From positions 186,001 to 250,000 of the IMG/VR virus record IMGVR_UViG_3300005965_000002: a DNA stretch of 64,000 bases; one strand, written 5' to 3'. Both the position numbers and the translations under genes were made by a program. Positions 20,201 to 42,409 of this stretch are shown here, in pieces. How positions within the stretch are numbered: position 1 is the stretch's first letter; each line of letters begins with the position of its first letter. The notes below the pieces were generated by a model. It was not told the origin of the DNA. It made no database searches and saw nothing but the letters and a program-made list of their open reading frames with translations.

Positions 20201-20665
20201 TTAATACGAATGATGAAACGTAACGGGTCTTTTATTCCTCTCGATGATTTAGGGAATCTTTCATTTGAAGTTTTCCAGAAAACTAGCAGCAGTGGGGTGC
20301 CCTCGTATAGGACACTTGATAGTGTTCTTACTTACCGGACTTCAGAAAACGGCGGGCCTGATCACCTTTTCCGTACCGTTTACGAGGATAATATCAGCTT
20401 AATGCTTGTAGATGACCCGACTGAGGTATCGCATGGTCCTGGTAGAGCTTATATACAGTCTGATGGTAGGATCATAGTCAGTACAAAAGACGGGGCCCCT
20501 CCACAAAGTAAATACTATAAAGCTGCCTATTACGTTTTATACCCAAATGATGTTAATGTAGCTGAGGATATAGAAACCACGGAAATTGAATACCTAGTGG
20601 TGGACTCAGCTAGTTTAAAAGATTTAGAAATTATAACTGAGCAAGTTACCAGAAGAGGATTATAA
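17267..20665 (+). CDS. Baseplate J-like (gp6/gpJ) wedge protein, 1132 aa
   Basis: ATGKVTFF...IPAGTQVST, VLGGSQGNVPAGSI...VTNTNPTNYGANRETNRELSERIKLAIAGVDSGTEGGY...VPGV...GGKVDIYI are characteristic Baseplate_J motifs. Extra N-terminal and internal beta-sandwich domains are present. Confidence 0.9.
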   Translation: MTIAAPIIEYPMTDWTGSGTDKYYTSELIQIISGTVPVTTADVQELGSIITVEFRYRITSGGTTSPYSNFSNAGITVGSTLSTATEIPWSLNTEGIVSFDVDDTIEFELKTVKRISNNQGAGYVSEESSLSKVTVGIIAEDKITASVIEPTGTRLERARDYIKVFVPVNSLKTNRDNDLVGVNFYISLDAGGGVNGYQKINQSYIVEADVSETESEVLQVSSTEDTTNNLTVTTTKTRQVQREYVTYTINSTVLNRLVSENKIRNVFLDNDATLNPDIVYYFVTTALSFDKSLKQVVESNYSVELEGEFLEYATDFQSIPGRNNSDIIFSVTKTLTTDNNTVNVIGGSVVRDILDPVALEFSKYYIIQDFIFKTLSVDTLIDFDDADGDGVSDPIETNIDKRNLADALGIRDGANLQLIINEQFDKRAANCNITRRDPIQATGKVTFFVSNAPTNDIIIPAGTQVSTAADPTTGSTSVAFTVVGTKLIDSSNPDFYYNPTLRRYEIEADVRAVLGGSQGNVPAGSIERATGLPSNIQVTNTNPTNYGANRETNRELSERIKLAIAGVDSGTEGGYKKTSESVPGVQQARVEKAGDELMVRDLDISSRRHLGGKVDIYIKGERRRQYIDQVAFKFEYPTDTFGKLSGERFYVINANEFRIQTRNTKVTATNPIISVSNVRNVTRGSDYDISGYRIIGDGDTVILENNQTNNRIGMATLDVIEVNYSYRSSNVITLEHQPVNTIISVTDSDGNLVDEAEYRLVRLEDPLLTGESSISKYGIEFLFDSQNDVNEFRQIDDEQHDMFLDIPISLSLKGVDIDSITVLNADDESIVYKKDIDYEVTGGTQVIPTQLSLLPNSAIRQGQRISVSYRANENFEVTYQANSLVEQAQEEVEKLKHADADVVVKQGIGNRVDISARVIKDGRLDSRYLESDRTVLKSRIQTAVANYVQKLRMGETFTQASLVNVIRSVPGVKDIKLPLIRMMKRNGSFIPLDDLGNLSFEVFQKTSSSGVPSYRTLDSVLTYRTSENGGPDHLFRTVYEDNISLMLVDDPTEVSHGPGRAYIQSDGRIIVSTKDGAPPQSKYYKAAYYVLYPNDVNVAEDIETTEIEYLVVDSASLKDLEIITEQVTRRGL

Positions 20666-20667
20666 AG

Positions 20668-25143: not shown

Positions 25144-25146
25144 TAC

Positions 25147-26223
25147 ATGGAAATTCGTTTAGGAAAAAACAATGTCATTAGAAGAGTTAAGGATGGACAA
25201 GGCAATACTAAGTACATCGTTAACTTAGGTACTATCATATATAACAATGTATTTAAGACATTAGATAACCTTGAAATTCCTATTTTTAATGAATCCATAT
25301 TTAGATTGCCTGATGATGCCAATAAGTACGCTGCTGTAAACGCTTACTATAATGTAGAGCAAGGCAGGTTCATATTTAAGACAGTCAAGAAGTCTATCTC
25401 AAATATCGGCTCTGTTAAGTCTGATGTAGTATATAATTCACTTCCTATCTGCCAGTTCATTTTAAGGCAAGTAGACCCTACTTTTGAAGTTATTCAAGTC
25501 TATGAGTATTCACAAGCTGCTACTTTTAGTATCTCAGATTCTCTAGAAAAAGGAGAAAAGGGGCTGCAGGGTCCTTTAGGGCAGACAGGAGCTCAAGGAG
25601 AAACAGGAGCTTTAGGCATAACAGGAGCTTTAGGAGAAATAGGATATACGGGTATACAAGGACCTACAGGCGTAGGTGAGACAGGGTATCACGGCCCGCA
25701 AGGAGAAACAGGGTGGTATCCCGATCTTGATTTAACTTTTCACTTAAAATTTAAGAGTGCAGATACGGTGCAGGTCGATTACTCCGTTTATGAAAAAGAT
25801 TTTCAATGGATTTCTAGTGGTGCCTCCTATTTTTCTACAGAGACAGGAATAATTGATAATGCCCATTTTGCTCAGTACGTCGGTGGGACTTCTAGATATT
25901 TAAGAAATGAATACATTGGTATCGGTAAGTCAGGTATAGGTTCAACCGGTTCTTTTTCTATGTGGTTCCGTCTTGACGTTCCGCCAATTCCTTCTTTTAC
26001 GTATAGCATAGATTCACAAGTATCTACGAAGGTACGGTTTCAGGATACTTCTGAGAATTATCCGTCGAACTGGTTCTGGGAATTTGGTGGAATAAATAAG
26101 ACCAGCACCGGTACAGATATCCCTGTCATTGATTTTGAATCCTCAGGATCATATGAGGTTTCATTGACGGCTACTAACAATTATGGATCTAATAAAGTTA
26201 CTCAAATTGTAGTGGTTCCATAA
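25147..26223 (+). CDS. Collagen-like protein 1: shared N-terminal domain + Gly-X-Y repeat + N-terminal half of a LamG-like domain + PKD domain
   Basis: GEKGLQGPLGQTGAQGETGALGITGALGEIGYTGIQGPTG..., then DLTFHLKF...DYS...GSFSMWFRLD, then PSFTYS...FQDTS...WFWEFG...GSYEVSLTATN. Confidence 0.75.
   Translation: MEIRLGKNNVIRRVKDGQGNTKYIVNLGTIIYNNVFKTLDNLEIPIFNESIFRLPDDANKYAAVNAYYNVEQGRFIFKTVKKSISNIGSVKSDVVYNSLPICQFILRQVDPTFEVIQVYEYSQAATFSISDSLEKGEKGLQGPLGQTGAQGETGALGITGALGEIGYTGIQGPTGVGETGYHGPQGETGWYPDLDLTFHLKFKSADTVQVDYSVYEKDFQWISSGASYFSTETGIIDNAHFAQYVGGTSRYLRNEYIGIGKSGIGSTGSFSMWFRLDVPPIPSFTYSIDSQVSTKVRFQDTSENYPSNWFWEFGGINKTSTGTDIPVIDFESSGSYEVSLTATNNYGSNKVTQIVVVP
25552..25719 (+). repeat. Collagen-like Gly-X-Y repeat (13 triplets, a GV interruption, then 5 more)
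   Basis: Read directly from the translation. Thr occupies the Y position in 7 triplets. Confidence 0.9.
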
Positions 26224-26744
26224 TGGATAGAATATTAGCAATGATTCCGTTAAAAGATGGGCACGCCTTTAAGTCTGAGGTTTTAAGGGGCTTGTGCAAG
26301 CAAACAGTGCCTGTTGATATAATGGCTGTTTCTAGACCTAAAAGCGAAAGGCATCGTAATATTCCTGCGGGATATATATCGATGTCAGAATGTAGAAATA
26401 TAGCAAAAGAAGAGGGTTTGGAGCAATACAATTCTGAATATTTTCTTTTGCTCAATAGAGACGTGGTATTAAAAAGAGACACAGATATTGAGGATATGAT
26501 AAATTTTCTTCAGTTTAATAGAGATTTTGGAGCTGTAGCTATAAATACTAGAAAAAAAGAAATCCGATTATTGGTTGATAATACTCATACAGATATAGCA
26601 TGCATGGTAATAAGAAGAAGTATATTGGAGAAGATTACTTTTCATAATGAAAAACATTGTAATTGCAGATGCGTGTGTGGCTATATAAGATCTAACGGTT
26701 TGAGTGTGGGCTACATAGACCATAGAAAATGTCCGGAGATTTAA
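26223..26744 (+). CDS. Minimal GT-A fold (GT2-like) glycosyltransferase
   Basis: Ordered GT2 landmarks: ILAMIP, LRGLCKQT, SECRNIA, EYFLLLNRDVVL (DxD position reads N-R-D), FGAVA, DIACMVIRRSILEKITF. Coupled to both neighbours (TAATG and TAA-ATG). Confidence 0.65.
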   Translation: MDRILAMIPLKDGHAFKSEVLRGLCKQTVPVDIMAVSRPKSERHRNIPAGYISMSECRNIAKEEGLEQYNSEYFLLLNRDVVLKRDTDIEDMINFLQFNRDFGAVAINTRKKEIRLLVDNTHTDIACMVIRRSILEKITFHNEKHCNCRCVCGYIRSNGLSVGYIDHRKCPEI

Positions 26745-29700
26745 ATGCTAGATTCTGTTTATTTTGTAGACCTATCAGCTACGGGTACTAGCCACGCAGG
26801 TACACCAAAAGATCCTTTTTCTTATGAGGATTTTTCTAATATTGTTGGGCCTTCAACTGATGATGAGCTTTTCTATTTTAAGGGCCAATATACTATTACA
26901 TCTGCATCACCAGCATTTAATACGGGTGGCGGTAATAAAAGAATAATAGCATGGGACTTAGAAGAGTTTGGTCCTTGGAGATTAAAGGTAGAAGACTTTT
27001 CTAAATTTTCATTAGGATCTACTTTTATCATAGAAGATGGTATCCTTTTAATAGATGACACAGGGGATATATCTTTTGACTTATTTCAACTAGAAAACGT
27101 CTATTTATATAGAAAAACATCTACAATTACAGACAAATTTATATTGGGAGGCTCGGCTGCTTCTAATATCTATATGTCCACAGTACAGATAGATGGAATT
27201 TTAGAGTACGACACCGGATCCATAACTACTAGTTGTCTTAAGGTAGAGAACGGTATATCAATTCCTTCTACAGCATCCACCGCAGCACTAACCTATTCTA
27301 CTTACAACGGAGATTCTACTGCAGTTACTCCTGATCCTGGATTCTCAGGGTATTTTAACTTTGCGAACAACCAGGATTTATTTGATTTTACGGGAATTAC
27401 GGACATAAATGATGACCCGCAGTTCCCTTCCGGGATTACTGTATCCGACCCTTTTAATGACCCCATTACCTTCTTTTTTGACGGTAATCCCAAAGTTAGA
27501 TCCCAGGGTGCCTTTTATAGCAATGGGGCTAATCCAATAGTTTATGTAGATTTGAATAGTGGTGTCCCCGCTGGTAGTGGGACTTCCGGATCCCCCTATA
27601 ATTTTACTCAATTTTATTCTGACCTGGATACCCGGTCATATGACACGGGTACGATTATTAAGCTTAAAGGGATGGCACAAACTACTAATTATATTTCTAT
27701 AGGCCAAAGATCGTTTGAGGGACATCTACTATTAGAAAGGTGGGAGAGTAGTATCCCCTGGGGAATTCATACTACGGATGGTATATCAAATAGAGGTATA
27801 TCAAGAGGCGGAATATTTAAAACTGATGCCGATTTTATTAATACATTGGATTTGTCGAATACCTACTTAGAGGCAAATAGAGTAATACTGTATTCTACTG
27901 ATAGAGGTGCTAAGATTAAAGGATCTACAGTGATAAGTTCTGGCACCCCAACAAGGATAGGTGACTGCTACACTCCCGAGATATACCTATTTGTCGATTC
28001 TAATTACATAGATTCCGGGGTAGCGGATGTCGGGTCAGATGTTTTTGTGTGGTATTTTGGGTTGTCCACAGCGTTTAGCCAAGCCTCTAATTCCGAATCT
28101 GACTTTTTTGATCCTTCTGAGGGTATTATTAAGACCTTTCAATTAGATGATTGCGTTTTTGGTGTCACTCCCTCAGTGGTTTCTTTTTCTACTACTTTCG
28201 ATGAAAATAATTACTTATACCCTTCCGATATATATAATAGCATCACTACTACCTCTTCAGATTATAGCACGAAATCAGGTTACTCTACTGGTATCTCAGG
28301 CAATCCCAGATACGGGGTGGGTGCCTACTATTTTCCGGAGGTGGTAGCTTCCTTTACAGCGTCCCCTACTTCAGGCGGTATACCGTTAGAAGTGAATTTT
28401 AATAATGACTCTACAGGTATTATAACTGAATACTCATGGGATTTTGGAGATGGTACTACTTCTACAGAAGAAAACCCTGTAAAGACTTATACCAGTGCGG
28501 GTACTTATACGGTTACGTTGACAGTTACTGGGTTAGAAGGGATTACTGATACTTTTACTAGAACTGATTATATTATAGCAGTTGATTCACTCACAGCTGG
28601 GTTTTCAGGATCACCTTTATCTGGATCAGAGCCCCTCACTGTTAATTTTACGGATAGCTCAATCGGTGACATAAGTTATCGTATATGGAATTTTGGTGAT
28701 GGTACGGCTTTAGAAGATGTAACCGATCCATCTCATACTTATAGTAATCCAGGAACATATACCGTCTCTCTTACAGTGCGTGATGCAGATTCTAATGAAG
28801 ATACAGAAACTAAAACAGATTATGTAGAAGTATCCTCTGGACCTTTAACTGCTAATTTCACGGGTACCCCACAATCTGGAGAAAAACCACTTACTGTTAA
28901 TTTTACAGATAATTCTGCGGGCAGTATTACATACAGATTGTGGGATTTTGGAGATGGGAATACGCAAGAAAACGTTACTGACCCATCTCATACTTATAGC
29001 GACTCCGGCGTTTACACAGTTTCTTTAACTATTAGAGATGCATCTCTCAATCAAGATATAAAAACAAGAACCGAGTATATAACAGTTACAGAGCCGCCTC
29101 TAAATGCTGATTTTTCTGCTAGTCCTGTTTTTGGCACTGAGCCTTTATCAGTATCTTTTACAGATAGCTCTACAGGGGATATATCTTATAGGCTATGGAC
29201 CTTTGGTGACGGGACTTCTGAAGAAGATACCGTAAACCCCTCCCATACATATACCAGCCCTGGTTTATACACAGTCAGCCTGTTGGTGAGGGATCCTTCA
29301 TTAGAAGAAGATTTAGAGACAAAGGTTAACTACGTAACTGTAGGTGAAGATTTTATAGTAGCCGACAAGGTTTTGATGGAATCCAGTAATGCTTCTACAG
29401 GGGATTATTGGAAGATATACATAGATGACCAGAAAAGATTTGTTTTTGAGACCAATGTATATATATGGAGAACTGTAGATCCTCAAGCTGAGATTAAAAA
29501 ATGGACGTTTATCCAATTTTTACCGCATAAAGATACCATGTACGTTGGGAAATACAGCTCTGGTTGGAAAAAAGTAGATCTTGTTAAATTCATTAACGGG
29601 TCTCCGGATACTCCAACCAGCACCAGAACGTATGTCGTTCCGAATTCTACATTTAAGATAGACGACATTCAAATATGGGATAAAGAAGTAAACAAAAAAA

Positions 29701-29753
29701 CCCATTTTCAGCAAAATAGGGGTAAAGCGGGATTACTGGATAATCGATCCTAA
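26745..29753 (+). CDS. Adhesin-like protein: two beta-helix-like modules + 4 PKD domains + C-terminal half of a LamG-like domain
   Basis: WDLEEFGPWR module. Four F-x-G/A-x-P-x-x-G-x-x-PL-x-V-x-F-x-[ND]-x-S-x-G...WxFGDG...GxYTVxL repeats. Terminal WKIYID...KWTFI...YVG...KIDDIQIWDK. Confidence 0.75.
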   Translation: MLDSVYFVDLSATGTSHAGTPKDPFSYEDFSNIVGPSTDDELFYFKGQYTITSASPAFNTGGGNKRIIAWDLEEFGPWRLKVEDFSKFSLGSTFIIEDGILLIDDTGDISFDLFQLENVYLYRKTSTITDKFILGGSAASNIYMSTVQIDGILEYDTGSITTSCLKVENGISIPSTASTAALTYSTYNGDSTAVTPDPGFSGYFNFANNQDLFDFTGITDINDDPQFPSGITVSDPFNDPITFFFDGNPKVRSQGAFYSNGANPIVYVDLNSGVPAGSGTSGSPYNFTQFYSDLDTRSYDTGTIIKLKGMAQTTNYISIGQRSFEGHLLLERWESSIPWGIHTTDGISNRGISRGGIFKTDADFINTLDLSNTYLEANRVILYSTDRGAKIKGSTVISSGTPTRIGDCYTPEIYLFVDSNYIDSGVADVGSDVFVWYFGLSTAFSQASNSESDFFDPSEGIIKTFQLDDCVFGVTPSVVSFSTTFDENNYLYPSDIYNSITTTSSDYSTKSGYSTGISGNPRYGVGAYYFPEVVASFTASPTSGGIPLEVNFNNDSTGIITEYSWDFGDGTTSTEENPVKTYTSAGTYTVTLTVTGLEGITDTFTRTDYIIAVDSLTAGFSGSPLSGSEPLTVNFTDSSIGDISYRIWNFGDGTALEDVTDPSHTYSNPGTYTVSLTVRDADSNEDTETKTDYVEVSSGPLTANFTGTPQSGEKPLTVNFTDNSAGSITYRLWDFGDGNTQENVTDPSHTYSDSGVYTVSLTIRDASLNQDIKTRTEYITVTEPPLNADFSASPVFGTEPLSVSFTDSSTGDISYRLWTFGDGTSEEDTVNPSHTYTSPGLYTVSLLVRDPSLEEDLETKVNYVTVGEDFIVADKVLMESSNASTGDYWKIYIDDQKRFVFETNVYIWRTVDPQAEIKKWTFIQFLPHKDTMYVGKYSSGWKKVDLVKFINGSPDTPTSTRTYVVPNSTFKIDDIQIWDKEVNKKTHFQQNRGKAGLLDNRS
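28343..29342 (+). repeat. Four tandem PKD-domain repeats
   Basis: Four ~83-aa units with WDFGDG/WNFGDG/WTFGDG cores, similar at both protein and DNA level. Confidence 0.9.
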
Positions 29754-29760
29754 CATTAAA

Positions 29761-29775
29761 CCATGATCTATTAAT
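29761..29775 (+). promoter_or_regulatory. Candidate late-promoter motif CCATGATCTATTAAT
   Basis: Shares the ATCTATTAAT core with the other copies. Lies in the 64-nt gap before the 2xPKD gene. Confidence 0.5.
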
Positions 29776-29817
29776 ATTTTTCCCTTATCATTACATGCAG
29801 CGAATAGATGAGGGAAT

Positions 29818-30288
29818 ATGAGTTTAGATGCGGCTTTTACAGTAAATTCAAATGTAGGCGCGGCTCCTTTTAGTGTAACTTTTTCATCTACACTTTTAGA
29901 GGGCACAGCTTCTTCCTATTTGTGGGATTTTGGGGATGGCACCACTAGTACTCAAGCATCTCCTACACATACTTACAATAACTTAGGCTTATATACTGTT
30001 AAGCTTACAGTTTCTAATAGTAGTACTTCAGAGTCTATTACCCTCACAAAAAATAAGCATATAATTGTTGTAGCTGTAGATTTTGAAGCTATCCCTGTAC
30101 AGGGATATGCTCCGTTGTCGGTAAAATTCACCGACAAAAGCACAGCTCCTACGGGTTTTTCTATTGCTTCAAGATCCTGGAGCTTTGGAGATGGGTCTAG
30201 TGCGGTCACATCTCAAAACCCTGTCCATTCGTACTCGCAACCGGGTACATATGCTGTTGATCTACAGCTTACGGTAAAGAGGACATAA
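29818..30288 (+). CDS. Small protein of two PKD domains only
   Basis: AAFTVNSNVGAAPFSVTF...YLWDFGDG...GLYTVKLTV and VDFEAIPVQGYAPLSVKFTDKS...WSFGDG...GTYAVDL. Confidence 0.85.
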   Translation: MSLDAAFTVNSNVGAAPFSVTFSSTLLEGTASSYLWDFGDGTTSTQASPTHTYNNLGLYTVKLTVSNSSTSESITLTKNKHIIVVAVDFEAIPVQGYAPLSVKFTDKSTAPTGFSIASRSWSFGDGSSAVTSQNPVHSYSQPGTYAVDLQLTVKRT

Positions 30289-30289
30289 A

Positions 30290-34297: not shown

Positions 34298-34306
34298 GAG
34301 GGCGTA

Positions 34307-37300
34307 ATGGCGATTATTTATGTAAATGAAAGCGCAAGCGGTTCAAATAATGGTACTACTTGGACTGATGCTTACACTAGCCTAGTTACAGCTTTATCCT
34401 CGGCGACTGACGGGGATGAGTTGTGGGTGGCCCAAGGTACATATTCACCAGGAGGGGCAGCGGGTGACTTTTTTGACGTTGCTGTTTCCAACCTAAGTAT
34501 ATACGGAGGGTTTCGAGGGGATGAAGTAAATAAGAATCAGAGAGATAGAACAAGATTTGAATCCATTCTCGACGGCGACGGTGTAAATGAAGCGATATTA
34601 AAAAATACAAACACAACATATCCATCCACTCTAATAATAGACAGTCTGTATTTTGAAAATTGCGCAGGTGATTTTTTCTTATCAGCTTTAGTCTTTAATT
34701 ATTCAGGAACAGACGGAGACGATAACTTAGAAGTATACAATAGCGTGTTCCGCAATAATAGCGGTTTCGACGGCGGTGCCGTTACAATTATAGGAAACGC
34801 ATTTTATTCTTATTGGAAAATAGAGAATTGTGAGTTTTATAATAACACAGCCTCACGCAATGGTGGGGCTATTTATGTGGGTGGTACATATGTTGGCGGT
34901 ACAAATATTAGGAATTGTATGTTTCATAACAATTCTGCTGTTAGAGGCGGTGCCGTTTATATTAGTACAAGACTAAATGTCTTGGAATCTTGTGCGTTCT
35001 ATAATAATACCGTGACAGAGAACGGTGGTGCTGTATACAATACGTTAACAACAGCAACCTTCAGAAACAATTCTTTCTACGGGAATACAGCGGGTATTAA
35101 CGGTGGAGCACTTTTCATAGTTAACTCAAATACAGACCCTTATAATTGTGTTTTTTATGGTAACACCGCTACTTCCTCAGGTAATGACATTTATGTAGAT
35201 CCTTTTGTTTTAGGTTCCGAAATAAACTATTGCTCTGCTACGTCTTTATCCGCACCTGATGTAGTAAATATTACAATTGGTAGTAGTAATGTAGCTGGAG
35301 ATCCAAATTTTGTCGATCCTTCTAATGGCGACTTAAGGTTAAAGTATACATCACAATGCATTGACGCTGGAGATGGAGATAACGCCACTACATACGACAT
35401 CGAAGGGAATCCAAGAGTCCAGGTAAAAACTAGTCCTGCTGGCACAGGGTCTCCCAATTATACAGATATGGGAGCCTATGAGTTTTCAGATGCTGTGAAA
35501 AGATATTACGTACAGCTTAGTAACTCATACACGTCTACAGGCCATACAGGTTCATATAATGATCCATACTCTTATGAAGATTTTGTAAGTAATATTTCCG
35601 CTGCTACAGGTAGAGCTATCTATCTTTTAAAGGGGACAAGGTCCTCATCCCTATCGGATATTACCGCTACCTCTCTTTATCAAGTAAGCCTTATCGCTTG
35701 GGACTTAAATGAGTACGGTCCCTGGAGAATACTACAGCCATCGAATGCTTTTGATGTAGATGCTTATATGCAAGATGGTATTGTAGATGCTGAGCGCATT
35801 TACTCTCTTAATGGAAGTAAGAGAATGTATATGCAGGGTAGTGCCGCGTCTACGACCGACTATATAGCGGGTACCCACGAACAAACTAATTTCGTAAATA
35901 CGGGTACGTCTAATCCGTTTACAGTAGAGACAGGAGACACAGCTACTGTCGATAGGTGCATCTTCAATGGTAATGAGGTTTTTGTAGATACCGGCGCTAC
36001 ATTTACCGTATCTAACAGTGTCAGTAATATTATTACCGGAGGAGCCTTTCTCACGGGCACAGGCACTATTAGCTCCTCTAATATGACATACGGATGGAAT
36101 CCTCCAGTTCTGCCGAGTAACACGAGTACAGATCTAACTGTATTTTCCTTAGATGGAGGTACTAGCCCAGCAACAATAAGTGATACTGCTGGGGTAGGGT
36201 ATGACGACGGATGGGCTAATGGTGAGTCTATATTTGTTAATCTATCCGTATCTTCTACAGGTAATGATGGTTACTATGGGGAAAATGCTGTAGGACTAAC
36301 CGAATTTATAGCAGCACTTTCGGATGGTCTAACATTTTATTTAAGAGGAAAAGCAAGTCTTCCAAGTTCTACGAATATCACAATAACATCAGGCACAGCA
36401 TCTTTTAAAGCCTGGAATCTTTCTAAGTATGGACCGTGGAAGTTAGAGATTAATAAGAATGCTGTAGGAGGTTTTTCCTCTGGCAGAGTCAACATGCAAG
36501 GTGGAAGTATAAGAAATAATTATTCAGGGGGAGCGGGTGACTTATTTCTTAATAACGGAGAAGATCTTTACATAGAGTCGGTTGGTAATCAATCAACTAT
36601 TTACGGTAACTTAACTAGATGTACCCTTAATTTTGATACGAGAGTACTTGTACAAAGTGACAGTAGCGCAACTTTTAATAATTGCATACTGAATAAAACA
36701 GGGTCGGCTAAGCTAGATTGTCAGAATGTAGGCGTAGACTTGATAATTAGCAATAGCATATCTGATGCGTCTAACTTCGCGGATTTGGTAGATGATAACT
36801 CAAGCGGTGGAGCCCTAGTATATGGAGAAGATAACACCTTTAACTGGACGGCTCCTACATTACCAGATTGGGATACCTCAGACTATAATGAATATCGATT
36901 AGCGGGATCGCCGTCAGCTATTTATTATGGTGTGCAGAGTTTTCTTACCACGATTTACGTAGACATAGCAAGTAGTAATGATACCTCTCTTACAGAAGGC
37001 GGTGATAGCTCATCCCCGGCATCTTACATATATTTAAATGATGTTATCTCTAGGATGCGCGGAGGGGATTTTAGGCTAAAAGGCGTGAGGGATATCACGA
37101 ATACTGCTGCCGATGAGATTTATTGGTTAAATGAGGGTATACCGTATAGAAACAACCTTTTATCTGATTGGGATAATGATACCGAAGGGCCCTGGAGATT
37201 AAGAGCCGACAAAGTTACCCTTAGTGGGGTAAACTTATTTAATGGTATCATATACTCGGATAAGCATGTTTATCTAACTGGATACACTATAGAGCCCTAT

Positions 37301-40300
37301 ACCGACACAACTTACTTTAGAGATGTCTTTGTAAGGGCGAGTGACCAGATAATAATAGGGTCTGGGGGATATGAGTTCTACGGCGACACGCTTCTTTCCG
37401 AAGCTAATCCCATAGCTTTTGTAGAGACAGTACCTCTAAGCCAGAACAATACCTGGTCTTATATAAACGATGGTTTTGTAGGCGGTGAATATAACACTTG
37501 GTGGAGTACCGATTTTAGAACAGGTACTGACGCATGGGAGCTTGAGGAAATACCCGAAGGTAGTGATAACTGGGTAGCGGTTCAGAATAGTTCTGTAAAT
37601 GTAAGGCTGACTCCTACGGGAGTAGCTTTAACTGGAGATTTTGTTTATAGATTCTGTATAGTAGATTCTAAAACTGGATTAGGAAATAGATCAGAAAAGT
37701 TTTATATATATGACGATACTGCGGGAACAGCTCGAGGCGGAATTGAATTCAGTATGGGCACAAATGTGCTCGAATTTGTAGATGCTTCCTTAGTAACTCT
37801 CGATTCTGTTATAGTGCCTACGGATCTTTATGACAAAATCTATATAGAGTTAAGGAGAAAAGATGGCGTAATTACTGCATCTTACTCCCCATATGTGCCA
37901 GATAATTATACGGATTTTTCTGGATCGTATACTTATGCCGACCCACATTACATAGTAATGGAGGGTGGTGATGTTATAGGTGCAGGCTGCTTTGCTCTGC
38001 AGGTTGAGGGTTCTACACCAGGGGATACTTCTAGTTTACCATATGGAGCAAAAGACCTTGATGCTATTCTAAAGGATTCTGTAATAGATACTCTCACTGT
38101 TTCTGAATCTTCATGGTCTTTTAATAGCATAAGTCTTTCTTATATAGCACAAACAGATAGTACGTGGTCAGCTAGTGGCTTAGTGTATTCCGGAACCAAT
38201 CAGTCTGGATGGGTTTCAGCTACTTGGCCAGCTTGGTCCTCCGTTTTATCTAATACAAAGGCAGATTTTGGGCTTTCTGTTATAGGATCAGGAATCACTC
38301 TATCAGGTTCAGGAAATTATACCAATTATAATGAGGGTCTGTGGGGAGAAATTAGAACAAATGTTGGGGCGTATTACTTTGATACAGCTCTAAATTTTAC
38401 GGCTTCTCCCACTCTAGCCTATTTTAGCCCTACTAACCCGGCACCTGTTACATTTACAGCAATTGATGATACGGGCGCTACCTCATGGAGATGGGATTTT
38501 GGGGATGGTACTGATTTTTATACTACCGATCCTTTATTTAAAAACCCGACCCACAGCTATACGTCAGAAGGTGTGTTTACTGTCTCCTTGACTATAAACG
38601 AATCCCCTGTTACTACAGTTACTAAAGCGGGATACATAATAATTCTTAGGACTCTAGAAGCTACCATAGTAGCTGATCCTCGTTTTTACTATGGGGCTAT
38701 ACCTCCTGGCGGGCTTCCTGTAGATTTTGGAGTAACTAACCCCACTAGGACATTAGATCCTACACCTGCTGGGGTTTACCCTGGTTTTTCCTGGGATTAT
38801 GGAGACGGATCTGCTGTAGTCACAGGATTAACGGGGCCTTCCCACGATTTTACTTCTTATGGAACGTTTAATGCACAATTAACAGTAAGAGACATAGGAG
38901 TTTCGGGTCTAGATTCCACAAAGCAGCTCACATCATTTGATATTGATGTTAAGATTTATAATCTAACTATATCTGTAAGCCCTACTTTAGGTAAAAAGCC
39001 TTTAGTTGTCAATTTTACAGCGACGCCTGCCTCTGGATTTTCTCCTGTGTCCTATCATTGGATATTCAGAGATGGGGCGGAATCATCCTCTCAGAGCCCG
39101 ACGCATCAGTATACAACTGAAGGAGTGTATGATACAGTACTGATAATAGATCAAGGTTTTGCTACTCAACAGATATTTAGCTCGGATGCAAGTTATCCAG
39201 GAGTCGATGTTGTTGACCCTGATATGCAAGTAATTGTATCCAGCGTTGATTCTGTTTTTACCGTATCTCCTATTTATGGGTATATTCCTTTAACCGGCTT
39301 GTTTGAAGACAATAGTATAGGTAATATAACCGGTTGGCAGTGGGATTTTGATGATGGCTCCTCTCAGGTACTAGGGGAAACAGGACTTTTTCATATCTAC
39401 GACACGGCTAATACATATAATCCTACACTTACCGTGTATGATATATACGGTCTTACGGATACATCTTCTGCAGAGGTGATAGCATTATCTCCTTTAGATA
39501 TAGATGTCTCAGATTCGACACCAACCGTAACTCAGTCAGTAACCTTCAGCCCTGTTAATGATACTTACGCTAATCAATGGGTGTGGGATCTTATTTATGT
39601 GGATCCAATACTCGGAGAGATAACAATAGATCGAAAAACAACTTCTACACAAGCTGACAGAAACTACGTAAAAGATATAGTAGTACCTGGTGATTATAAA
39701 ATCCAACTTACTATTACGGATGACCTGGGTAACTCGTATAGTAAAATCGAATCTTTTACAGCATCCGAAAATATCAGCATCGTCACTGATCCTTCTCCCG
39801 CTACAGGAGAAGTTCCTTTAGAGGTTGATTTTTCTACTTCTGGTTTGGACCTGACAGGAATTAATAGTATTAAATGGGATTTAAATGGTGATGGGACAAC
39901 GGATTCAACAAGCGATACTTCTTCTTATACTTATAATACTCCGGATACTTATTCTTCTACCCTGGTAGTAGAGTGGCATATTGAGGATGTTGACAACTCA
40001 GCGCTATCTACTACGGTGTCTATCCAGAGAGGAATTTTTGTAATAGCCGGTCAGAATCCTCTTGTGATTTCGATTTCTGCTAATCCCTTACATGGACATA
40101 AACCTCTTGTGTCTACTTTTGCAGGATCTGCAAATAATAGCGTTTCTACCTGGAAGTGGGAAGTAAGAAAAGCATCGACCTCATATACTACTATCGGTTC
40201 AACACAGCAGATTACATATACTTTTTCTGAGTCCGGTGAGTACTCGGTTAGACTTACAGTTACGGATGTGTATGGGGAAACTGATTCTGCTACTGTAAGA

Positions 40301-40495
40301 ATAACTGTCGTAAACGATATCTCCACTTACGATAGAGCCCCGGATCCAGATAAGTTAATGGAGATTACCGGGCCTGGGCAGCTTCAGATTTTTAATGGTG
40401 GTAGAGGCGTACGCTTTAGGATACCGAGTGGGGAAACAAGCCAAAAACCCTATGGCTTTAAGAGATCCAACGGGCCTAGCCATATATATGATTAG
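34307..40495 (+). CDS. Large adhesin-like protein (2062 aa): PMP-like beta-helix + three W[DN]x4GPW modules + ~7 PKD domains
   Basis: YVNESASGSNNGTTWTDAY...GDELWVAQGTY. Five FxxN...GGA[IVL] repeats. DPNFVD...DLRL...CIDAG...DMGAYEF (choice-of-anchor-Q-like end). C-terminal PKD array. Confidence 0.78.
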   Translation: MAIIYVNESASGSNNGTTWTDAYTSLVTALSSATDGDELWVAQGTYSPGGAAGDFFDVAVSNLSIYGGFRGDEVNKNQRDRTRFESILDGDGVNEAILKNTNTTYPSTLIIDSLYFENCAGDFFLSALVFNYSGTDGDDNLEVYNSVFRNNSGFDGGAVTIIGNAFYSYWKIENCEFYNNTASRNGGAIYVGGTYVGGTNIRNCMFHNNSAVRGGAVYISTRLNVLESCAFYNNTVTENGGAVYNTLTTATFRNNSFYGNTAGINGGALFIVNSNTDPYNCVFYGNTATSSGNDIYVDPFVLGSEINYCSATSLSAPDVVNITIGSSNVAGDPNFVDPSNGDLRLKYTSQCIDAGDGDNATTYDIEGNPRVQVKTSPAGTGSPNYTDMGAYEFSDAVKRYYVQLSNSYTSTGHTGSYNDPYSYEDFVSNISAATGRAIYLLKGTRSSSLSDITATSLYQVSLIAWDLNEYGPWRILQPSNAFDVDAYMQDGIVDAERIYSLNGSKRMYMQGSAASTTDYIAGTHEQTNFVNTGTSNPFTVETGDTATVDRCIFNGNEVFVDTGATFTVSNSVSNIITGGAFLTGTGTISSSNMTYGWNPPVLPSNTSTDLTVFSLDGGTSPATISDTAGVGYDDGWANGESIFVNLSVSSTGNDGYYGENAVGLTEFIAALSDGLTFYLRGKASLPSSTNITITSGTASFKAWNLSKYGPWKLEINKNAVGGFSSGRVNMQGGSIRNNYSGGAGDLFLNNGEDLYIESVGNQSTIYGNLTRCTLNFDTRVLVQSDSSATFNNCILNKTGSAKLDCQNVGVDLIISNSISDASNFADLVDDNSSGGALVYGEDNTFNWTAPTLPDWDTSDYNEYRLAGSPSAIYYGVQSFLTTIYVDIASSNDTSLTEGGDSSSPASYIYLNDVISRMRGGDFRLKGVRDITNTAADEIYWLNEGIPYRNNLLSDWDNDTEGPWRLRADKVTLSGVNLFNGIIYSDKHVYLTGYTIEPYTDTTYFRDVFVRASDQIIIGSGGYEFYGDTLLSEANPIAFVETVPLSQNNTWSYINDGFVGGEYNTWWSTDFRTGTDAWELEEIPEGSDNWVAVQNSSVNVRLTPTGVALTGDFVYRFCIVDSKTGLGNRSEKFYIYDDTAGTARGGIEFSMGTNVLEFVDASLVTLDSVIVPTDLYDKIYIELRRKDGVITASYSPYVPDNYTDFSGSYTYADPHYIVMEGGDVIGAGCFALQVEGSTPGDTSSLPYGAKDLDAILKDSVIDTLTVSESSWSFNSISLSYIAQTDSTWSASGLVYSGTNQSGWVSATWPAWSSVLSNTKADFGLSVIGSGITLSGSGNYTNYNEGLWGEIRTNVGAYYFDTALNFTASPTLAYFSPTNPAPVTFTAIDDTGATSWRWDFGDGTDFYTTDPLFKNPTHSYTSEGVFTVSLTINESPVTTVTKAGYIIILRTLEATIVADPRFYYGAIPPGGLPVDFGVTNPTRTLDPTPAGVYPGFSWDYGDGSAVVTGLTGPSHDFTSYGTFNAQLTVRDIGVSGLDSTKQLTSFDIDVKIYNLTISVSPTLGKKPLVVNFTATPASGFSPVSYHWIFRDGAESSSQSPTHQYTTEGVYDTVLIIDQGFATQQIFSSDASYPGVDVVDPDMQVIVSSVDSVFTVSPIYGYIPLTGLFEDNSIGNITGWQWDFDDGSSQVLGETGLFHIYDTANTYNPTLTVYDIYGLTDTSSAEVIALSPLDIDVSDSTPTVTQSVTFSPVNDTYANQWVWDLIYVDPILGEITIDRKTTSTQADRNYVKDIVVPGDYKIQLTITDDLGNSYSKIESFTASENISIVTDPSPATGEVPLEVDFSTSGLDLTGINSIKWDLNGDGTTDSTSDTSSYTYNTPDTYSSTLVVEWHIEDVDNSALSTTVSIQRGIFVIAGQNPLVISISANPLHGHKPLVSTFAGSANNSVSTWKWEVRKASTSYTTIGSTQQITYTFSESGEYSVRLTVTDVYGETDSATVRITVVNDISTYDRAPDPDKLMEITGPGQLQIFNGGRGVRFRIPSGETSQKPYGFKRSNGPSHIYD

Positions 40496-40503
40496 GATAT
40501 GAT

Positions 40504-41151
40504 ATGTTAAAAAGTAAAAAGAACACGATAAATGCTTCTTTAAAACCAACTATATCTAAGGGGACTGTTAGAATAAATGCGGGTTCCTTTGTATTTGATA
40601 ATAATTGGATAAATTTTAGAGGCAAACTGTTTAAGCTAGATGACTATATAGGTAGGGTCTTAGCTCCGCCTAGGACAAGGTTTTTTAATGATCGAAATTA
40701 CGCTTTCTATTTAGTTATTGGATTAGATAAAAATGGGGAGCTGACTTATTTAGAGGGTAACCAGGTAAAGTTTTCTTCTATTAAGTCTGTACCAGTACCG
40801 TCTGTGATAGATATTATTCCTCTTGTGGGGCTTATTGTTATTCAGGATGGCTCTAGAGATCTAAACTTTGGCTACAAACCTTTGAATGATTCCAATGTCA
40901 TATTTTTTTCTGGTGCCGGTAATGTCCTCGATAAAGATAAAAAGGGAATTCAGGGAGAATCAAATAGATCATATGGGTATACAGGGCTGTTGGGGGAGAC
41001 AGGAATAGAGGGAGAGCGGGGCGCAAAAGGCTTGAGGGGTGAGACTGGAATAATTGGCCCTACTATTTATGGGGATCGGGGGGAAACCGGTACTAAAGGT
41101 ATGACAGGAATTAACTGGAATATACATATTCCCTTTGAATTCTTTCTCTAA
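40504..41151 (+). CDS. Collagen-like protein 2: shared N-terminal domain + Gly-X-Y repeat, no C-terminal domain
   Basis: GYTGLLGETGIEGERGAKGLRGETGIIGPT...GDRGETGTKGMTG. The N-terminal domain aligns by eye with 41180 and 25147. Confidence 0.78.
   Translation: MLKSKKNTINASLKPTISKGTVRINAGSFVFDNNWINFRGKLFKLDDYIGRVLAPPRTRFFNDRNYAFYLVIGLDKNGELTYLEGNQVKFSSIKSVPVPSVIDIIPLVGLIVIQDGSRDLNFGYKPLNDSNVIFFSGAGNVLDKDKKGIQGESNRSYGYTGLLGETGIEGERGAKGLRGETGIIGPTIYGDRGETGTKGMTGINWNIHIPFEFFL
40945..41115 (+). repeat. Collagen-like Gly-X-Y repeat (about 17 triplets, two interruptions)
   Basis: Read directly from the translation. Thr at the Y position in 6 triplets. Confidence 0.9.
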
Positions 41152-41163
41152 TTATCTAATAAT
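41149..41163 (+). promoter_or_regulatory. Candidate late-promoter motif TAATTATCTAATAAT
   Basis: Overlaps the upstream stop codon exactly as at 16491 and 49000. Confidence 0.55.
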
Positions 41164-41179
41164 AACTTTGGCTTAAAAT

Positions 41180-42409
41180 ATGGCATTTAGAACTAGAAAA
41201 GTAGCTGATTTCTCTACCCTTAATAAAGATGTTAATGTCCACGGCGAGAATGTCGTGTCCATTAAAGGGGGCTCTGTTGCTATCGGAGATACCTGGATAC
41301 AGTTTAAAGGTACTAAAATTGATCTCCAGGATTTTGTAGAAAAGTATATAACCAATTCAAGAAGGTTGTTTAATCAGCGATTTGGTGTGCTTTATGTATT
41401 GATAGCGATTAACGAGAAAGCACAGTTAGAAGTAATACCTAGTATATCGTATAACAAGACATCGACCGGTGATGTTAAAGTTTTTCCTAGTTTATCGAGT
41501 AAATTACCTATAATGGTAGTTAAGCTTACCCAAGATGGAAGCTACGGGTTAACCGGTATTAGTAGAATAACTGAAAGCGATGTAGAACAGTACTTAGGGT
41601 ATGGTAATTTTACTCTGAGGGGCCCTCAGGGAGAAACAGGGGGTCTTGGCAGTACCGGTTTTCAAGGACTTACCGGTTTTATCGGAGCTACTGGTTATTC
41701 TGGTCCTACAGGGCTACAAGGAGAGACCGGAATTAATAGTTTTTCTGTAAAAGGGTATCCTGGAGTTAGAGGAGAGCAGGGGGAGAGCCTTCCAGCTTTT
41801 GAACCGACCAGATATGCGATTCCAGTAGCAAATTTTGTAGGTGCCCCTTTAAGCGGAGAAGCAAGTCTTTCTGTATCCTTTACCGATTTATCAAACGGAA
41901 ATCCAACTTCCTGGCTATGGGATTTTGGGGATGGAAATACTTCTACTCAACAGAATCCGACTCATAGTTACGCTTCAGCTGGGACATATACTGTGTCTTT
42001 GGTAACTACGAGCCCAGCTGGTGAGGATCAAGAGATTAAATATGATTACATAACAGTTACCGAAGCATTAGCTGCTGATTTTGCGGTAACCCCCACAGAA
42101 GGTGACGAGAGAGTAACTACATTTAATTTTGATGGCAGTTTCTCAGCCGGAACGATAACTTCATATAGTTGGGATTTTGGAGATTCAATTTCTGCTACGG
42201 GAGAGACTGCGACCCATGTTTATAATGGGGTATCTGGTCAAATTACAGTATCCCTTACAGTAACGGGGCCTTCTGGCTCAGATACTGTATCAAAAACTAT
42301 TACTGTGGACGGGTACATAATACAGAGCACAACAGATGACGATGAAGATACCTGGCAGGATACAGCGGATAGTTCAGAGGATAATGTACAAAATTCATCG
42401 GAGGAATAA
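41180..42409 (+). CDS. Collagen-like protein 3: shared N-terminal domain + Gly-X-Y repeat + 2 PKD domains + acidic tail
   Basis: GPQGETGGLGSTGFQGLTGFIGATGYSGPTGLQGETGIN...GYPGVRGEQGES, two WxWDFGD PKD units, and a D/E-rich end. Confidence 0.8.
   Translation: MAFRTRKVADFSTLNKDVNVHGENVVSIKGGSVAIGDTWIQFKGTKIDLQDFVEKYITNSRRLFNQRFGVLYVLIAINEKAQLEVIPSISYNKTSTGDVKVFPSLSSKLPIMVVKLTQDGSYGLTGISRITESDVEQYLGYGNFTLRGPQGETGGLGSTGFQGLTGFIGATGYSGPTGLQGETGINSFSVKGYPGVRGEQGESLPAFEPTRYAIPVANFVGAPLSGEASLSVSFTDLSNGNPTSWLWDFGDGNTSTQQNPTHSYASAGTYTVSLVTTSPAGEDQEIKYDYITVTEALAADFAVTPTEGDERVTTFNFDGSFSAGTITSYSWDFGDSISATGETATHVYNGVSGQITVSLTVTGPSGSDTVSKTITVDGYIIQSTTDDDEDTWQDTADSSEDNVQNSSEE
41621..41788 (+). repeat. Collagen-like Gly-X-Y repeat (13 triplets, interruption, 4 more)
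   Basis: Read directly from the translation. Thr falls at Y in every second triplet of the first 12. Confidence 0.9.

What the first reader, a model, noticed from the sequence alone, without database searches (positions are those of the whole stretch)
25147..42409. Three paralogous collagen chains of matched length: a possible heterotrimer
Seen: 25147, 40504 and 41180 share an N-terminal domain (VNLGTIIYNN / INAGSFVFDN / IKGGSVAIGD; LPICQFILRQ / IPLVGLIVIQDGS / LPIMVVKLTQDGS) followed by 17-18 Gly-X-Y triplets with short interruptions. Chains 1 and 3 both break after triplet 13. The C-termini differ: half-LamG+PKD, nothing, and 2xPKD. Known: C1q and many animal collagens are A/B/C heterotrimers, while characterised prokaryotic and phage collagen-like proteins are generally treated as homotrimers. 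Inference: one asymmetric stalk presenting different ends, or three stalk types on a common anchor.
Basis: partly seen in the sequence, partly recalled or inferred. Interest (0 to 1): 0.62.

Follow-up and report, generated by a model that had tools for sequence, protein, structure and literature searches.

The report
Three matched collagen-stalk baseplate fibre proteins
A huge uncultured phage, and every relative I could check, carries one copy each of three related tail-baseplate proteins whose thin collagen-like stalks are held at the same length of about 16 nm; whether they form one mixed fibre or three separate fibres is still open.

Summary
The window is part of a 258,580-bp IMG/VR phage record (about half of a roughly 0.5-Mb myovirus-type genome). 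Genes A (25147-26223), B (40504-41151) and C (41180-42409) each encode an N-terminal domain of about 135-147 residues, a 56-57-residue Gly-X-Y tract with a break 12-17 residues before its end, and a different C-terminus.

- **Paralogy:** B and C are clear paralogs. A is a remote one: BLAST finds nothing, hhalign gives E 2.6e-4, and both fold models find the same structures.
- **Fold:** both N-domain models best match the "shoulder" domain that anchors trimeric phage fibres and TssK to baseplate wedges. Z is only 3.5-5.6.
- **Conservation:** about 15 related phages keep exactly one A, one B and one C in fixed synteny, with unchanged tract length. Other collagen proteins of the clade range from 17 to 423 triplets.

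The heterotrimer is neither shown nor excluded. Its stated refuter (free paralog number) fails. The A+B+C fold gave only weak support (0.33 against 0.02) and cannot tell hetero- from homotrimers. By precedent, I favour three homotrimeric stalks on the baseplate.

The parts
25147..26223 (+). Gene A, 358 aa: shoulder-like N-domain, collagen stalk, unassigned beta-rich module, one PKD domain
   Evidence: ORF and translation. Pfam Collagen and PKD. The family of about 20 representatives is mostly 353-398 aa.
25147..25551 (+). A N-terminal domain (residues 1-135), shoulder-like beta fold
   Evidence: AF2 mean pLDDT 85.5. VIA top hits are A-1(L) fibre shoulder Z 5.6, SPP1 gp22 4.7, Mtd 4.2, phage 1358 RBP 4.0 and p2 RBP 3.6.
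25552..25719 (+). A collagen-like tract (residues 136-191): 14 triplets + 2 residues + 4 triplets = 56 residues
25720..26013 (+). A post-helix module (residues 192-289).
   Evidence: Conserved in A3/A6. No Pfam match and no PDB-sequence match.
26014..26211 (+). A PKD domain (residues 290-355)
   Evidence: Pfam PKD_4 E 3.4e-7. Profile hits to ColH PKD domains.
40504..41151 (+). Gene B, 215 aa: shoulder-like N-domain, collagen stalk, 11-residue hydrophobic tail, no distal domain
   Evidence: The family is 214-219 aa in every relative.
40504..40944 (+). B N-terminal domain (residues 1-147), paralog of the C N-domain
   Evidence: BLASTP E 2e-14; hhalign probability 99%
40945..41115 (+). B collagen-like tract (residues 148-204), 57 residues with two short breaks
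41116..41148 (+). B C-terminal tail. The last helix residues plus the first tail residue, T-G-I-N-W, are invariant in 15 sequences.
   Evidence: Alignment A4
41180..42409 (+). Gene C, 409 aa: shoulder-like N-domain, collagen stalk, two PKD domains, acidic tail. It starts 28 nt after B's stop.
   Evidence: The family is 213-409 aa with variable C-termini.
41180..41620 (+). C N-terminal domain (residues 1-147), shoulder-like fold
   Evidence: AF2 mean pLDDT 73.5. The nine best VIA entries (ranks 1-9, HFTV1 and TssK twice each) all belong to the shoulder/TssK N-domain family, Z 5.3-3.3.
41621..41788 (+). C collagen-like tract (residues 148-203): 13 triplets + 5 residues + 4 triplets = 56 residues
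41822..42307 (+). C two PKD domains (about residues 215-293 and 300-376)
   Evidence: Pfam PKD_4 E 1.2e-31, two stretches. The bounds of the second domain are taken from the BLAST alignment.
17267..25143 (+). Context: Baseplate_J-type wedge gene (17267-20665) and a 1491-aa BNR-propeller protein (20668-25143). In the relatives that cover this stretch they lie directly upstream of A.
   Evidence: Pfam Baseplate_J E 1.3e-17 and PSII_BNR; phrog_6; synteny
26223..40495 (+). Context: variable PKD-rich cassette between A and B. It starts with a weak GT2-like 173-aa ORF.
   Evidence: Pfam. Content and length differ among relatives.

Best explanation
A, B and C are three single-copy, paralogous stalk proteins of the baseplate periphery of a roughly 0.5-Mb contractile-tail phage.

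Each has an N-terminal 'shoulder' domain. This is the fold that anchors trimeric receptor-binding proteins, the A-1(L) long tail fibre and T6SS TssK onto the wedge. I infer that it trimerises and docks on the wedge made by the Baseplate_J-type protein and its 1491-aa neighbour. A 56-57-residue collagen-like triple helix follows directly. It would be about 16 nm long (0.29 nm rise per residue, from my own knowledge), with a conserved imperfection, probably a hinge, 12-17 residues before its distal end.

The distal ends differ:
- A has a conserved beta-rich module plus one PKD domain.
- B has only a conserved 11-residue hydrophobic tail, probably a plug for another protein.
- C has a variable end: none, one or two PKD domains plus an acidic tail.

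I think each protein most likely forms its own homotrimer. The stalks would be kept equal because all three must span the same distance in the baseplate. The outer layer they reach may be built by the variable PKD-rich proteins encoded between A and B.

Shown: the domain architecture, the paralogy, the fixed copy number and the fixed stalk length.
Inferred: triple-helix formation, docking on the wedge and homotrimeric state.
For: - **Tail/baseplate module:** hub phrog_430 and wedge phrog_6 / Pfam Baseplate_J lie upstream of A. Replication genes start only at 55.5 kb.
- **Shoulder fold:**
  - In a search of 48,161 chains, the nine best entries for the C model are all of this family: A-1(L) gp34, SPP1 gp22, phage 1358 RBP, Mtd, HFTV1 fibre (two entries), TssK (two) and p2 RBP.
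  - The A model shares its top three hits and also finds 1358 RBP and p2 RBP.
  - The matched part of gp34 is its shoulder (residues 1-155). That domain anchors a homotrimeric fibre to the (gp31)2-gp32 wedge (PMC10966104).
- **Conservation:**
  - Gene order is invariant: J, 1491 aa, A, variable cassette, B, C, 1567 aa.
  - Every IMG/VR record holding A (G001-G010, G012) has exactly two B/C-type N-domains, adjacent to each other.
  - Each of the six tested for A (G001-G005, G012) has exactly one, including the 466,729-bp record rated 98% complete.
- **Stalk length:**
  - A is 56 residues (59-62 only when linker residues happen to read G-x-y). B is 57 (56-60). C is 56 or 57.
  - This holds although non-Gly positions are far more variable than the N-domains (1.98-2.34 against 1.35-1.42 bits).
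  - Other collagen proteins of the clade range from 17 to 423 triplets.
- **Different neighbours:** A abuts the 1491-aa gene (4 nt apart). B starts 8 nt after the 2062-aa gene in this window, though its upstream neighbour differs in relatives.
Against: - Nothing here measures oligomeric state.
- Equal length and a matched break in three separately evolving families is what a mixed helix would predict directly. Under homotrimers it needs an added assumption of a common spacing constraint.
- B as a homotrimer would be a headless stalk.
- The structural matches are weak (Z <= 5.6, Foldseek E >= 0.02). The fold assignment therefore rests on the consistent ranking of one family, not on any single score.
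- No Pfam or PHROG family covers the N-domains.
- The A+B+C co-fold did pass its mark, weakly.
Confidence: 0.55

Rival explanations
1. A:B:C heterotrimer. One chain of each type forms a single pseudo-threefold shoulder and one triple helix. The result is an asymmetric fibre whose tip carries A's module plus PKD, B's short tail and C's PKD arm.
For: - Helix length and break position are matched in all three families over deep divergence.
- Copy number is strictly 1:1:1 in every record that covers both regions.
- Thr occupies the Y position at triplets 4 and 6 in all three consensus tracts.
- B lacks any distal domain.
- Co-fold of A against B+C: ipSAE 0.33 against a best control of 0.02, partner pLDDT at least 71, runs agreeing in at least 69% of contacts. 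The tool rates this 'weak support'. The mark was reached by 58 of 80 solved complexes and 2 of 110 mismatched pairs, but a pass at a score of 0.60 or under, as here, was seen in only 7 of those 80 and in both mismatches.
Against: - The co-fold controls were unrelated proteins, and the tool notes that close cousins of a true partner also pass. A paralog of a homotypic partner would therefore pass as well.
- A is never adjacent to B-C and lies directly after another gene.
- A's N-domain is 12 residues shorter and shows no pairwise similarity to B or C.
- The helices have no complementary charges.
- Break types do not co-vary cleanly between chains. An unbroken C occurs with a broken A and B in G003 and L022.
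- In G008, C alone has a 38-residue insert inside the helix.
- No natural prokaryotic or phage heterotrimeric collagen is on record (PMC8968730).
Confidence: 0.12
2. B and C form a mixed trimer (B2C or BC2), and A forms its own homotrimer. B would then be a stalk-only chain that lowers the number of distal PKD arms per fibre.
For: - B lies directly upstream of C in every one of about 17 contigs, 20-35 nt apart where genes were called.
- Their N-domains are clear paralogs.
- B is 214-219 aa everywhere and ends right after the helix, while C's end varies.
- The helices are 57 and 56/57 residues.
Against: - Tandem paralogous fibre genes that each form their own oligomer are common. An example is phage 80-alpha FibL/FibU, 21% identical N-domains in stacked rings (PMC7048315).
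- B has a chain-specific 4-residue break near the start of the helix that C lacks.
Confidence: 0.15
3. The proteins are not baseplate stalks. They could be neck or capsid decoration fibres, or the Gly-X-Y tracts could be flexible linkers that do not form triple helices.
For: - The shoulder assignment rests on weak Z scores.
- The tracts are poor in Pro (about 4-5%) and short, so intrinsic helix stability may be low.
Against: - The genes sit inside the hub-wedge-fibre module directly after the wedge genes.
- Gly is invariant at every third position across three families. A mere linker would not need that, nor a fixed length.
Confidence: 0.05

Closest known systems
Long tail fibre gp34 of Anabaena myophage A-1(L) (PDB 8KEC; PMC10966104)
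   Same: It is the best structural match of both N-domain models (Z 5.6 and 5.3). The match falls on its N-terminal shoulder (residues 1-155), which anchors a trimeric fibre to the baseplate wedge. By gp number its gene follows the wedge genes (gp31, gp32, then the fibres gp33 and gp34), as A follows the J-type gene and the 1491-aa gene here.
   Different: gp34 continues into a T4 gp37-like arm, not a collagen helix. A-1(L) has one such protein, not three paralogs. There is no detectable sequence similarity.
FibU and FibL of Staphylococcus phage 80-alpha (PMC7048315)
   Same: They are two paralogous baseplate fibre proteins with related N-terminal anchor domains (21% identity). FibU carries a predicted collagen-like segment after the anchor domain and a distal knob.
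   Different: Their anchor is a BppU-like Ig domain of a siphovirus baseplate, not a shoulder fold. The collagen segment is short (residues 178-208). Only FibU is collagenous. No length matching between paralogs is described.
Shoulder-domain trimers: T6SS TssK and the lactococcal phage p2 and 1358 receptor-binding proteins
   Same: Same fold family by ranking. The domain is N-terminal. From my own knowledge, it is the trimer's attachment point to the wedge or baseplate.
   Different: From my own knowledge, those proteins continue into helical or beta-prism necks and a head domain. None has a collagen stalk. All solved examples are homotrimers.
C1q and other A/B/C heterotrimeric animal collagens
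   Same: Three paralogous chains with collagen tracts of matched length and an interruption at a matched position. Copy number is fixed at one each.
   Different: Chain selection in animal collagens is set by a non-collagenous trimerisation domain (PMC8968730). No such hetero-specific domain is shown here. A is not clustered with B-C. Heteromer formation is untested.
T4 gp10, gp11 and gp12 (from my own knowledge, not tested here)
   Same: Three fibrous baseplate-periphery proteins encoded after the wedge genes. They are thought to share ancestry, and each forms its own homotrimer attached to the wedge or to one another.
   Different: They have no collagen tracts, no equal-length stalks and different folds.
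Bacterial and prophage collagen-like proteins (Scl1/Scl2, BclA, E. coli O157 prophage proteins; PMC8968730, PMC3368898)
   Same: Gly-X-Y tracts without hydroxyproline that are Thr-rich and flanked by a globular trimerisation domain. Many are phage tail fibre parts (the PHROG hits are all on the collagen tract).
   Different: From my own knowledge, tract length in those families varies widely between strains. Here it is fixed to within one residue in three paralog families.

Membership tests
Collagen triple-helix repeat (Pfam PF01391) | Uninterrupted or nearly uninterrupted Gly at every third residue over many triplets | tested here: met
   17-18 triplets in each chain. Every helix Gly is invariant in family alignments A3, A4 and A5.
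Collagen triple-helix repeat (Pfam PF01391) | Profile score above Pfam's gathering cut-off (27.2 bits) | tested here: met
   A scores 30.7 and C 27.3 bits. B scores 25.8, just below, because of its two breaks.
Collagen triple-helix repeat (Pfam PF01391) | Three chains actually wind into a triple helix | not testable with these tools
   This needs circular dichroism with melting, or a solved structure.
Phage RBP / tail-fibre shoulder domain, TssK N-domain fold | N-terminal beta-sandwich superposable on solved shoulders | tested here: inconclusive
   One fold family fills the top of both lists out of 48,161 chains, but Z is only 3.3-5.6 and Foldseek E is at least 0.02. The tool warns that Z under 8 may reflect a common arrangement.
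Phage RBP / tail-fibre shoulder domain, TssK N-domain fold | Sequence-level family membership | tested here: not met
   No Pfam family covers the N-domains, and the PHROG matches lie on or start just before the collagen tracts. No tblastn match to B in 50,697 phage records.
Phage RBP / tail-fibre shoulder domain, TssK N-domain fold | Forms a trimer that docks on the wedge (gp6/gp7, TssF/TssG type) | not testable with these tools
   Only context is available: A directly follows the Baseplate_J gene and its 1491-aa neighbour in all 12 relatives whose contig covers that stretch.
Heterotrimeric collagens of the C1q type | Three paralogous chains | tested here: met
   B-C: E 2e-14. A is remote: hhalign E 2.6e-4 and probability 42% against B, plus the same fold hits.
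Heterotrimeric collagens of the C1q type | Matched helix length and matched interruption in the three chains | tested here: met
   56/57/56 residues here and in about 15 relatives. The break always lies 12-17 residues before the helix end.
Heterotrimeric collagens of the C1q type | Obligate co-occurrence at fixed copy number | tested here: met
   One A, one B and one C in every record covering both regions. L011 is undecided because only 10 kb upstream is held.
Heterotrimeric collagens of the C1q type | The three different chains assemble into one helix | tested here: inconclusive
   Co-fold ipSAE 0.33 against a best control of 0.02, rated 'weak support'. The controls do not test against homotrimers.
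PKD domain (PF18911 / PF00801) | Profile match above the cut-off | tested here: met
   A: one domain, 30.7 bits. C: two domains, 109 bits.
   No Pfam match in ten family members at E<=10. The family profile matches only PKD chains in the PDB. The fold of residues 192-289 was not modelled on its own.

The most novel reading that the evidence does not exclude
Some or all of these chains (A:B:C, or B with C) wind into one mixed triple helix. Chain choice would be made by the diverged shoulder domains. This would be the first natural heterotrimeric collagen-like helix outside animals, and an asymmetric phage fibre that shows different ends on one stalk.
Probability: 0.25. Interest if true: 0.8.

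Novelty: new variant of a known kind. Interest (0 to 1): 0.5.

Why it matters
Collagen-like tracts in phage and bacterial proteins usually drift in length. In this clade other collagen proteins range from 17 to 423 triplets. Three paralog families nevertheless hold a 56-57-residue tract, with a break at the same place, across phages whose N-domains are only 35-50% identical. That marks the stalk as a molecular ruler in the baseplate of some of the largest known phages, whose tails have no solved structure.

It also gives a clean, small test system for a long-standing question: can a collagen heterotrimer arise outside animals? The system is three proteins of 215-409 residues with clear domain borders.

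If the stalks are homotrimers, the result still adds a new architecture, shoulder anchor plus collagen neck, to the catalogue of phage fibres. It also marks A and B-C as the conserved bounds of a hypervariable, PKD-rich, probably host-recognition cassette.

Tried and rejected
- **Known phages:** megablast of 24000-44000 against 50,697 phage records gave no match. tblastn of B against the same records gave none. The DNA polymerase finds only a 28%-identical uncultured 485-kb phage, so no named relative is available.
- **PHROG scans:** the matches to A, B and C lie on or start just before the collagen tracts, so they say nothing about the N-domains.
- **Single-protein scans of IMG/VR** found only a second, identical copy of this phage.
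- **The alignment scan with A1** failed for lack of a conserved stretch. Scans with A2 and A4 worked.
- **The Logan contig behind L011** is not held for whole-record search. The 277-aa gene upstream there is not an A homolog, so L011 stays undecided for A.
- **Foldseek** against PDB and BFVD gave no match at E<=0.001 for either N-domain.
- **LamG label:** rejected at sequence level.
- **Helix-encoded chain selection:** net charge is -1 to -6 for A, -5 to +1 for B and -5 to +3 for C. There is no complementarity.
- **Co-variation of break types between chains of the same genome:** patterns follow two or three clades only, too few independent events to count. I did not build a formal test.
- **G008 insert:** the 38-residue insert in C's helix was considered as evidence against a mixed helix. 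It could loop out of either kind of trimer, so it carries little weight.
- **Complex prediction A+B+C** returned 'weak support' (0.33 against 0.02). Its controls are unrelated proteins, so I do not count it for or against homotrimers. Two earlier attempts found the machine busy.
- **Readthrough or frameshift joining B to C:** rejected. The genes are in different frames, 28 nt apart, and each has a conserved N-terminus in relatives.
Full report
**1. What the window is.** The window is bases 186,001-250,000 of a 258,580-bp IMG/VR virus record that CheckV rates 55% complete. The full genome is therefore near 0.5 Mb. One relative, G005, is 466,729 bp and rated 98% complete. All long ORFs are on the + strand.
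- Positions 1-55,400 are a tail and baseplate module.
  - A hub/lysozyme-like protein (phrog_430) lies at 903-2942.
  - A Baseplate_J / phrog_6 wedge protein lies at 17267-20665.
  - Many giant PKD-rich proteins follow.
- Replication genes start at 55,551.
- No named phage is close.

**2. The observation.** Genes A (25147-26223, 358 aa), B (40504-41151, 215 aa) and C (41180-42409, 409 aa) exist as stated.

| Chain | Tract (residues) | Layout | Length |
|---|---|---|---|
| A | 136-191 | 14 triplets + 2 residues + 4 triplets | 56 |
| B | 148-204 | 2 triplets + 4 residues + 10 triplets + 2 residues + 5 triplets | 57 |
| C | 148-203 | 13 triplets + 5 residues + 4 triplets | 56 |

- Pfam finds Collagen in all three, with B just under the cut-off. 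It finds one PKD domain in A and two in C.
- B ends 11 residues after the helix.
- The 'half-LamG' label for A residues 192-289 could not be confirmed.

**3. Are the N-domains related?**
- B and C: yes. BLASTP on the N-domains alone gives E 2e-14. hhalign gives 99% probability.
- A: not by BLASTP and not by a search of its own genome.
- With family profiles, A aligns colinearly to B over 100 columns (E 2.6e-4, probability 42%) and to B+C over 92 columns (E 1.5e-3, probability 17%).
- AF2 models of the A and C N-domains (mean pLDDT 85.5 and 73.5) show the same order of strands.
- I therefore take A as a remote paralog. The evidence is suggestive at sequence level and is supported by fold.

**4. 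What the N-domain is.** Foldseek gave nothing significant. An exhaustive alignment to 48,161 PDB chains puts one fold family on top for both models.

| PDB entry | Z, A model | Z, C model |
|---|---|---|
| 8KEC, cyanophage A-1(L) long tail fibre | 5.6 | 5.3 |
| 2XC8, SPP1 gp22 | 4.7 | 5.2 |
| 4L92, phage 1358 RBP | 4.0 | 4.8 |
| 1YU0, Mtd | 4.2 | 4.0 |
| 2WZP, phage p2 RBP | 3.6 | 3.5 |
| 9H5B / 9H7V, HFTV1 fibre and baseplate | not listed | 4.0 / 3.7 |
| 6N38 / 5M30 / 5Y0E, TssK | not listed | 3.9 / 3.3 / 3.2 |

- Each Z is low, and the tool warns about values under 8. What carries weight is that one family fills ranks 1-9 for C and supplies five of the top 13 for A.
- The matched part of A-1(L) gp34 is its shoulder domain (residues 1-155). 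That domain anchors a homotrimeric fibre to the (gp31)2-gp32 wedge (PMC10966104).
- A occupies the same kind of gene position here, directly after the J-type wedge gene and its 1491-aa neighbour.

**5. Relatives.**
- Searches recovered a C family (21 proteins, 242-409 aa; IMG/VR relatives go down to 213 aa), a B family and an A family.
  - B is 214-219 aa in every member.
  - The A family has about 20 representatives at 50% clustering, mostly 353-398 aa.
- On every contig examined, B lies directly upstream of C.
- All eleven distinct IMG/VR records tested that hold A (G001-G010, G012) hold exactly two B/C-type N-domains, adjacent to each other. Each of the six tested for A (G001-G005, G012) holds exactly one.
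- One record with B-C but no A (G013) holds only 10.7 kb upstream, less than the A-to-B distance in its nearest relative.
- Gene order is fixed: J, 1491 aa, A, variable PKD-rich cassette of 2-14 kb, B, C, sometimes an extra gene or two, then 1567 aa, 197 aa, 323 aa and 1189 aa.

**6. The stalk as a ruler.**
- Across about 15 distinct phages, the tract is 56 residues in A, 57 (56-60) in B and 56 or 57 in C.
  - A reads 59-62 only where linker residues happen to read G-x-y. The coordinate of the helix end stays the same.
- All chains have an imperfection 12-17 residues before the distal end. It is a 2-residue insert, a 5-residue stretch or, in one C subclade, a restored triplet that keeps the spacing.
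- Non-Gly positions are much more variable than the N-domains (entropy 1.98-2.34 against 1.35-1.42 bits). Thr fills 10-13% of the tract, and Thr recurs at the Y position of triplets 4 and 6 in all three consensus tracts.
- As an internal control, other collagen-bearing fibre proteins of the same clade vary freely in tract length.
  - The 1555-codon frame of this genome has 423 triplets.
  - Proteins with the same tip domain in G005 and G010 have 152, 170 or 17-25 triplets.
- The constant length in A, B and C is therefore selected, not a lack of slippage.

**7. Heterotrimer or three homotrimers?**

For a mixed helix:
- Length and break are matched.
- Copy number is fixed at 1:1:1.
- B has no distal domain.
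- The A+B+C co-fold (A scored against B and C) gave ipSAE 0.33, 0.31 and 0.33 against a best control of 0.02. Partner pLDDT was at least 71, and the runs agreed in at least 69% of contacts.
  - The tool rates this 'weak support'. The mark was reached by 58 of 80 solved complexes and 2 of 110 mismatched pairs.
  - A pass at a score of 0.60 or under, as here, was seen in only 7 of those 80 solved complexes and in both mismatched pairs that passed.

Against a mixed helix, or neutral:
- The controls in that job were unrelated proteins, and the tool notes that close cousins of a true partner also pass. A paralog would pass whether or not it is the real partner.
- A is never next to B-C and abuts a different upstream gene.
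- A's N-domain is shorter and far diverged.
- The helices show no charge complementarity.
- An unbroken C coexists with a broken A and B in G003 and L022.
- In G008 only C carries a 38-residue insert inside the helix.
- The nearest architectural analogue is phage 80-alpha FibL/FibU. These are paralogous anchors, one with a collagen-like segment, arranged as separate stacked rings (PMC7048315).

My estimates:

| Reading | Probability |
|---|---|
| Three separate homotrimeric stalks | about 0.55 |
| Mixed B/C trimer with a separate A | about 0.15 |
| Full A:B:C heterotrimer | about 0.12 |
| Not a baseplate stalk | about 0.05 |
| Unassigned | the rest |

**8. Mechanism proposed (inferred).**
- The shoulder trimers dock on the wedge.
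- The 16-nm helix holds the distal ends at a fixed radius or height, with a hinge about 4 nm from the tip.
- A presents a conserved module plus PKD. C presents a variable PKD or acidic end.
- B's invariant T-G-I-N-W junction and hydrophobic tail plug into another component.
- The variable PKD-rich proteins encoded between A and B are the likely outer, host-facing layer.
- These Pro-poor, Thr-rich helices may need clamping at both ends or Thr glycosylation. A weak GT2-like ORF follows A here. Relatives carry glycosyltransferase, methyltransferase or radical-SAM genes in the cassette. This step is speculative.

**9. Verdict.**
- The heterotrimer idea survives its own comparative test but gains no direct support.
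- The architecture (shoulder anchor plus fixed-length collagen neck, in three single-copy paralogs) is a new variant of known phage fibre proteins.

Noticed in passing
Own genome G000:C1:145976-150640 (+), outside the window; held as L052:77-4741: A 1555-codon open frame with no in-frame ATG (TTG at codon 10). It holds 423 Gly-X-Y triplets in 17 runs, the longest of 188 triplets, between non-collagen ends of about 120-130 residues. As a triple helix it would be several hundred nanometres long.
   Followed up: partly
L053 (G005:C1:366500-375500), L054 (G010:C1:1-14700), L055 (G008:C1:40500-43500): The 118-residue C-terminal tip domain of that giant collagen protein recurs in G005 and G010 in several collagen-bearing ORFs just downstream of B-C (988 aa with 152 triplets, and 226-544 aa with 17-25 triplets). 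G010 also has an 831-aa ORF with 170 triplets there. In G008 the tip domain matches the next ORF (199 aa). This is a variable fibre family with free tract length.
   Followed up: partly
window 26223-40495: The stretch between A and B is a variable cassette of PKD-rich giant proteins (1002, 156, 1335 and 2062 aa). Its length (2-14 kb) and content differ between relatives, while both flanks are conserved. It looks like a host-recognition swap region.
   Followed up: partly
window 26223-26744; L012:3680-5650; L011:2980-3654: Enzyme-like genes sit inside the fibre module. Here it is a weak GT2-like 173-aa ORF whose start overlaps A's stop. In L012 they are Methyltransf_21 and two glycosyltransferase-like genes. 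In L011 it is a radical-SAM gene. They may modify structural proteins, for example the Thr-rich helices.
   Followed up: no
window 20668-25143: The 1491-aa protein directly after the Baseplate_J gene carries BNR / PSII_BNR propeller repeats (E 4e-31). It is 45-59% identical in the 13 relatives that hold it. Its position matches that of the second wedge subunit in simpler myoviruses, but no such homology was shown.
   Followed up: no
window 3571-13236: A 3221-aa ORF between the hub-like gene and the wedge genes has no PHROG match at all.
   Followed up: no
L026:15103-16116 (G008, gene C): This C homolog has a 38-residue non-collagen insert after triplet 10 of the helix, followed by 8 more triplets. 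A and B of the same phage have no insert.
   Followed up: partly
P0012 and P0029 (NCBI names): Homologs of C and B are filed in NCBI under metagenome-assembled genomes called Candidatus Altiarchaeales archaeon and Dehalococcoidia bacterium. These are most likely phage contigs binned with cellular genomes.
   Followed up: no
L009 / L010 / L017 / L056 (IMGVR_UViG_3300025377_000091, 80,945 bp): A second IMG/VR record carries A, B and C at 100% amino-acid identity. It is the same phage assembled as a shorter contig.
   Followed up: no
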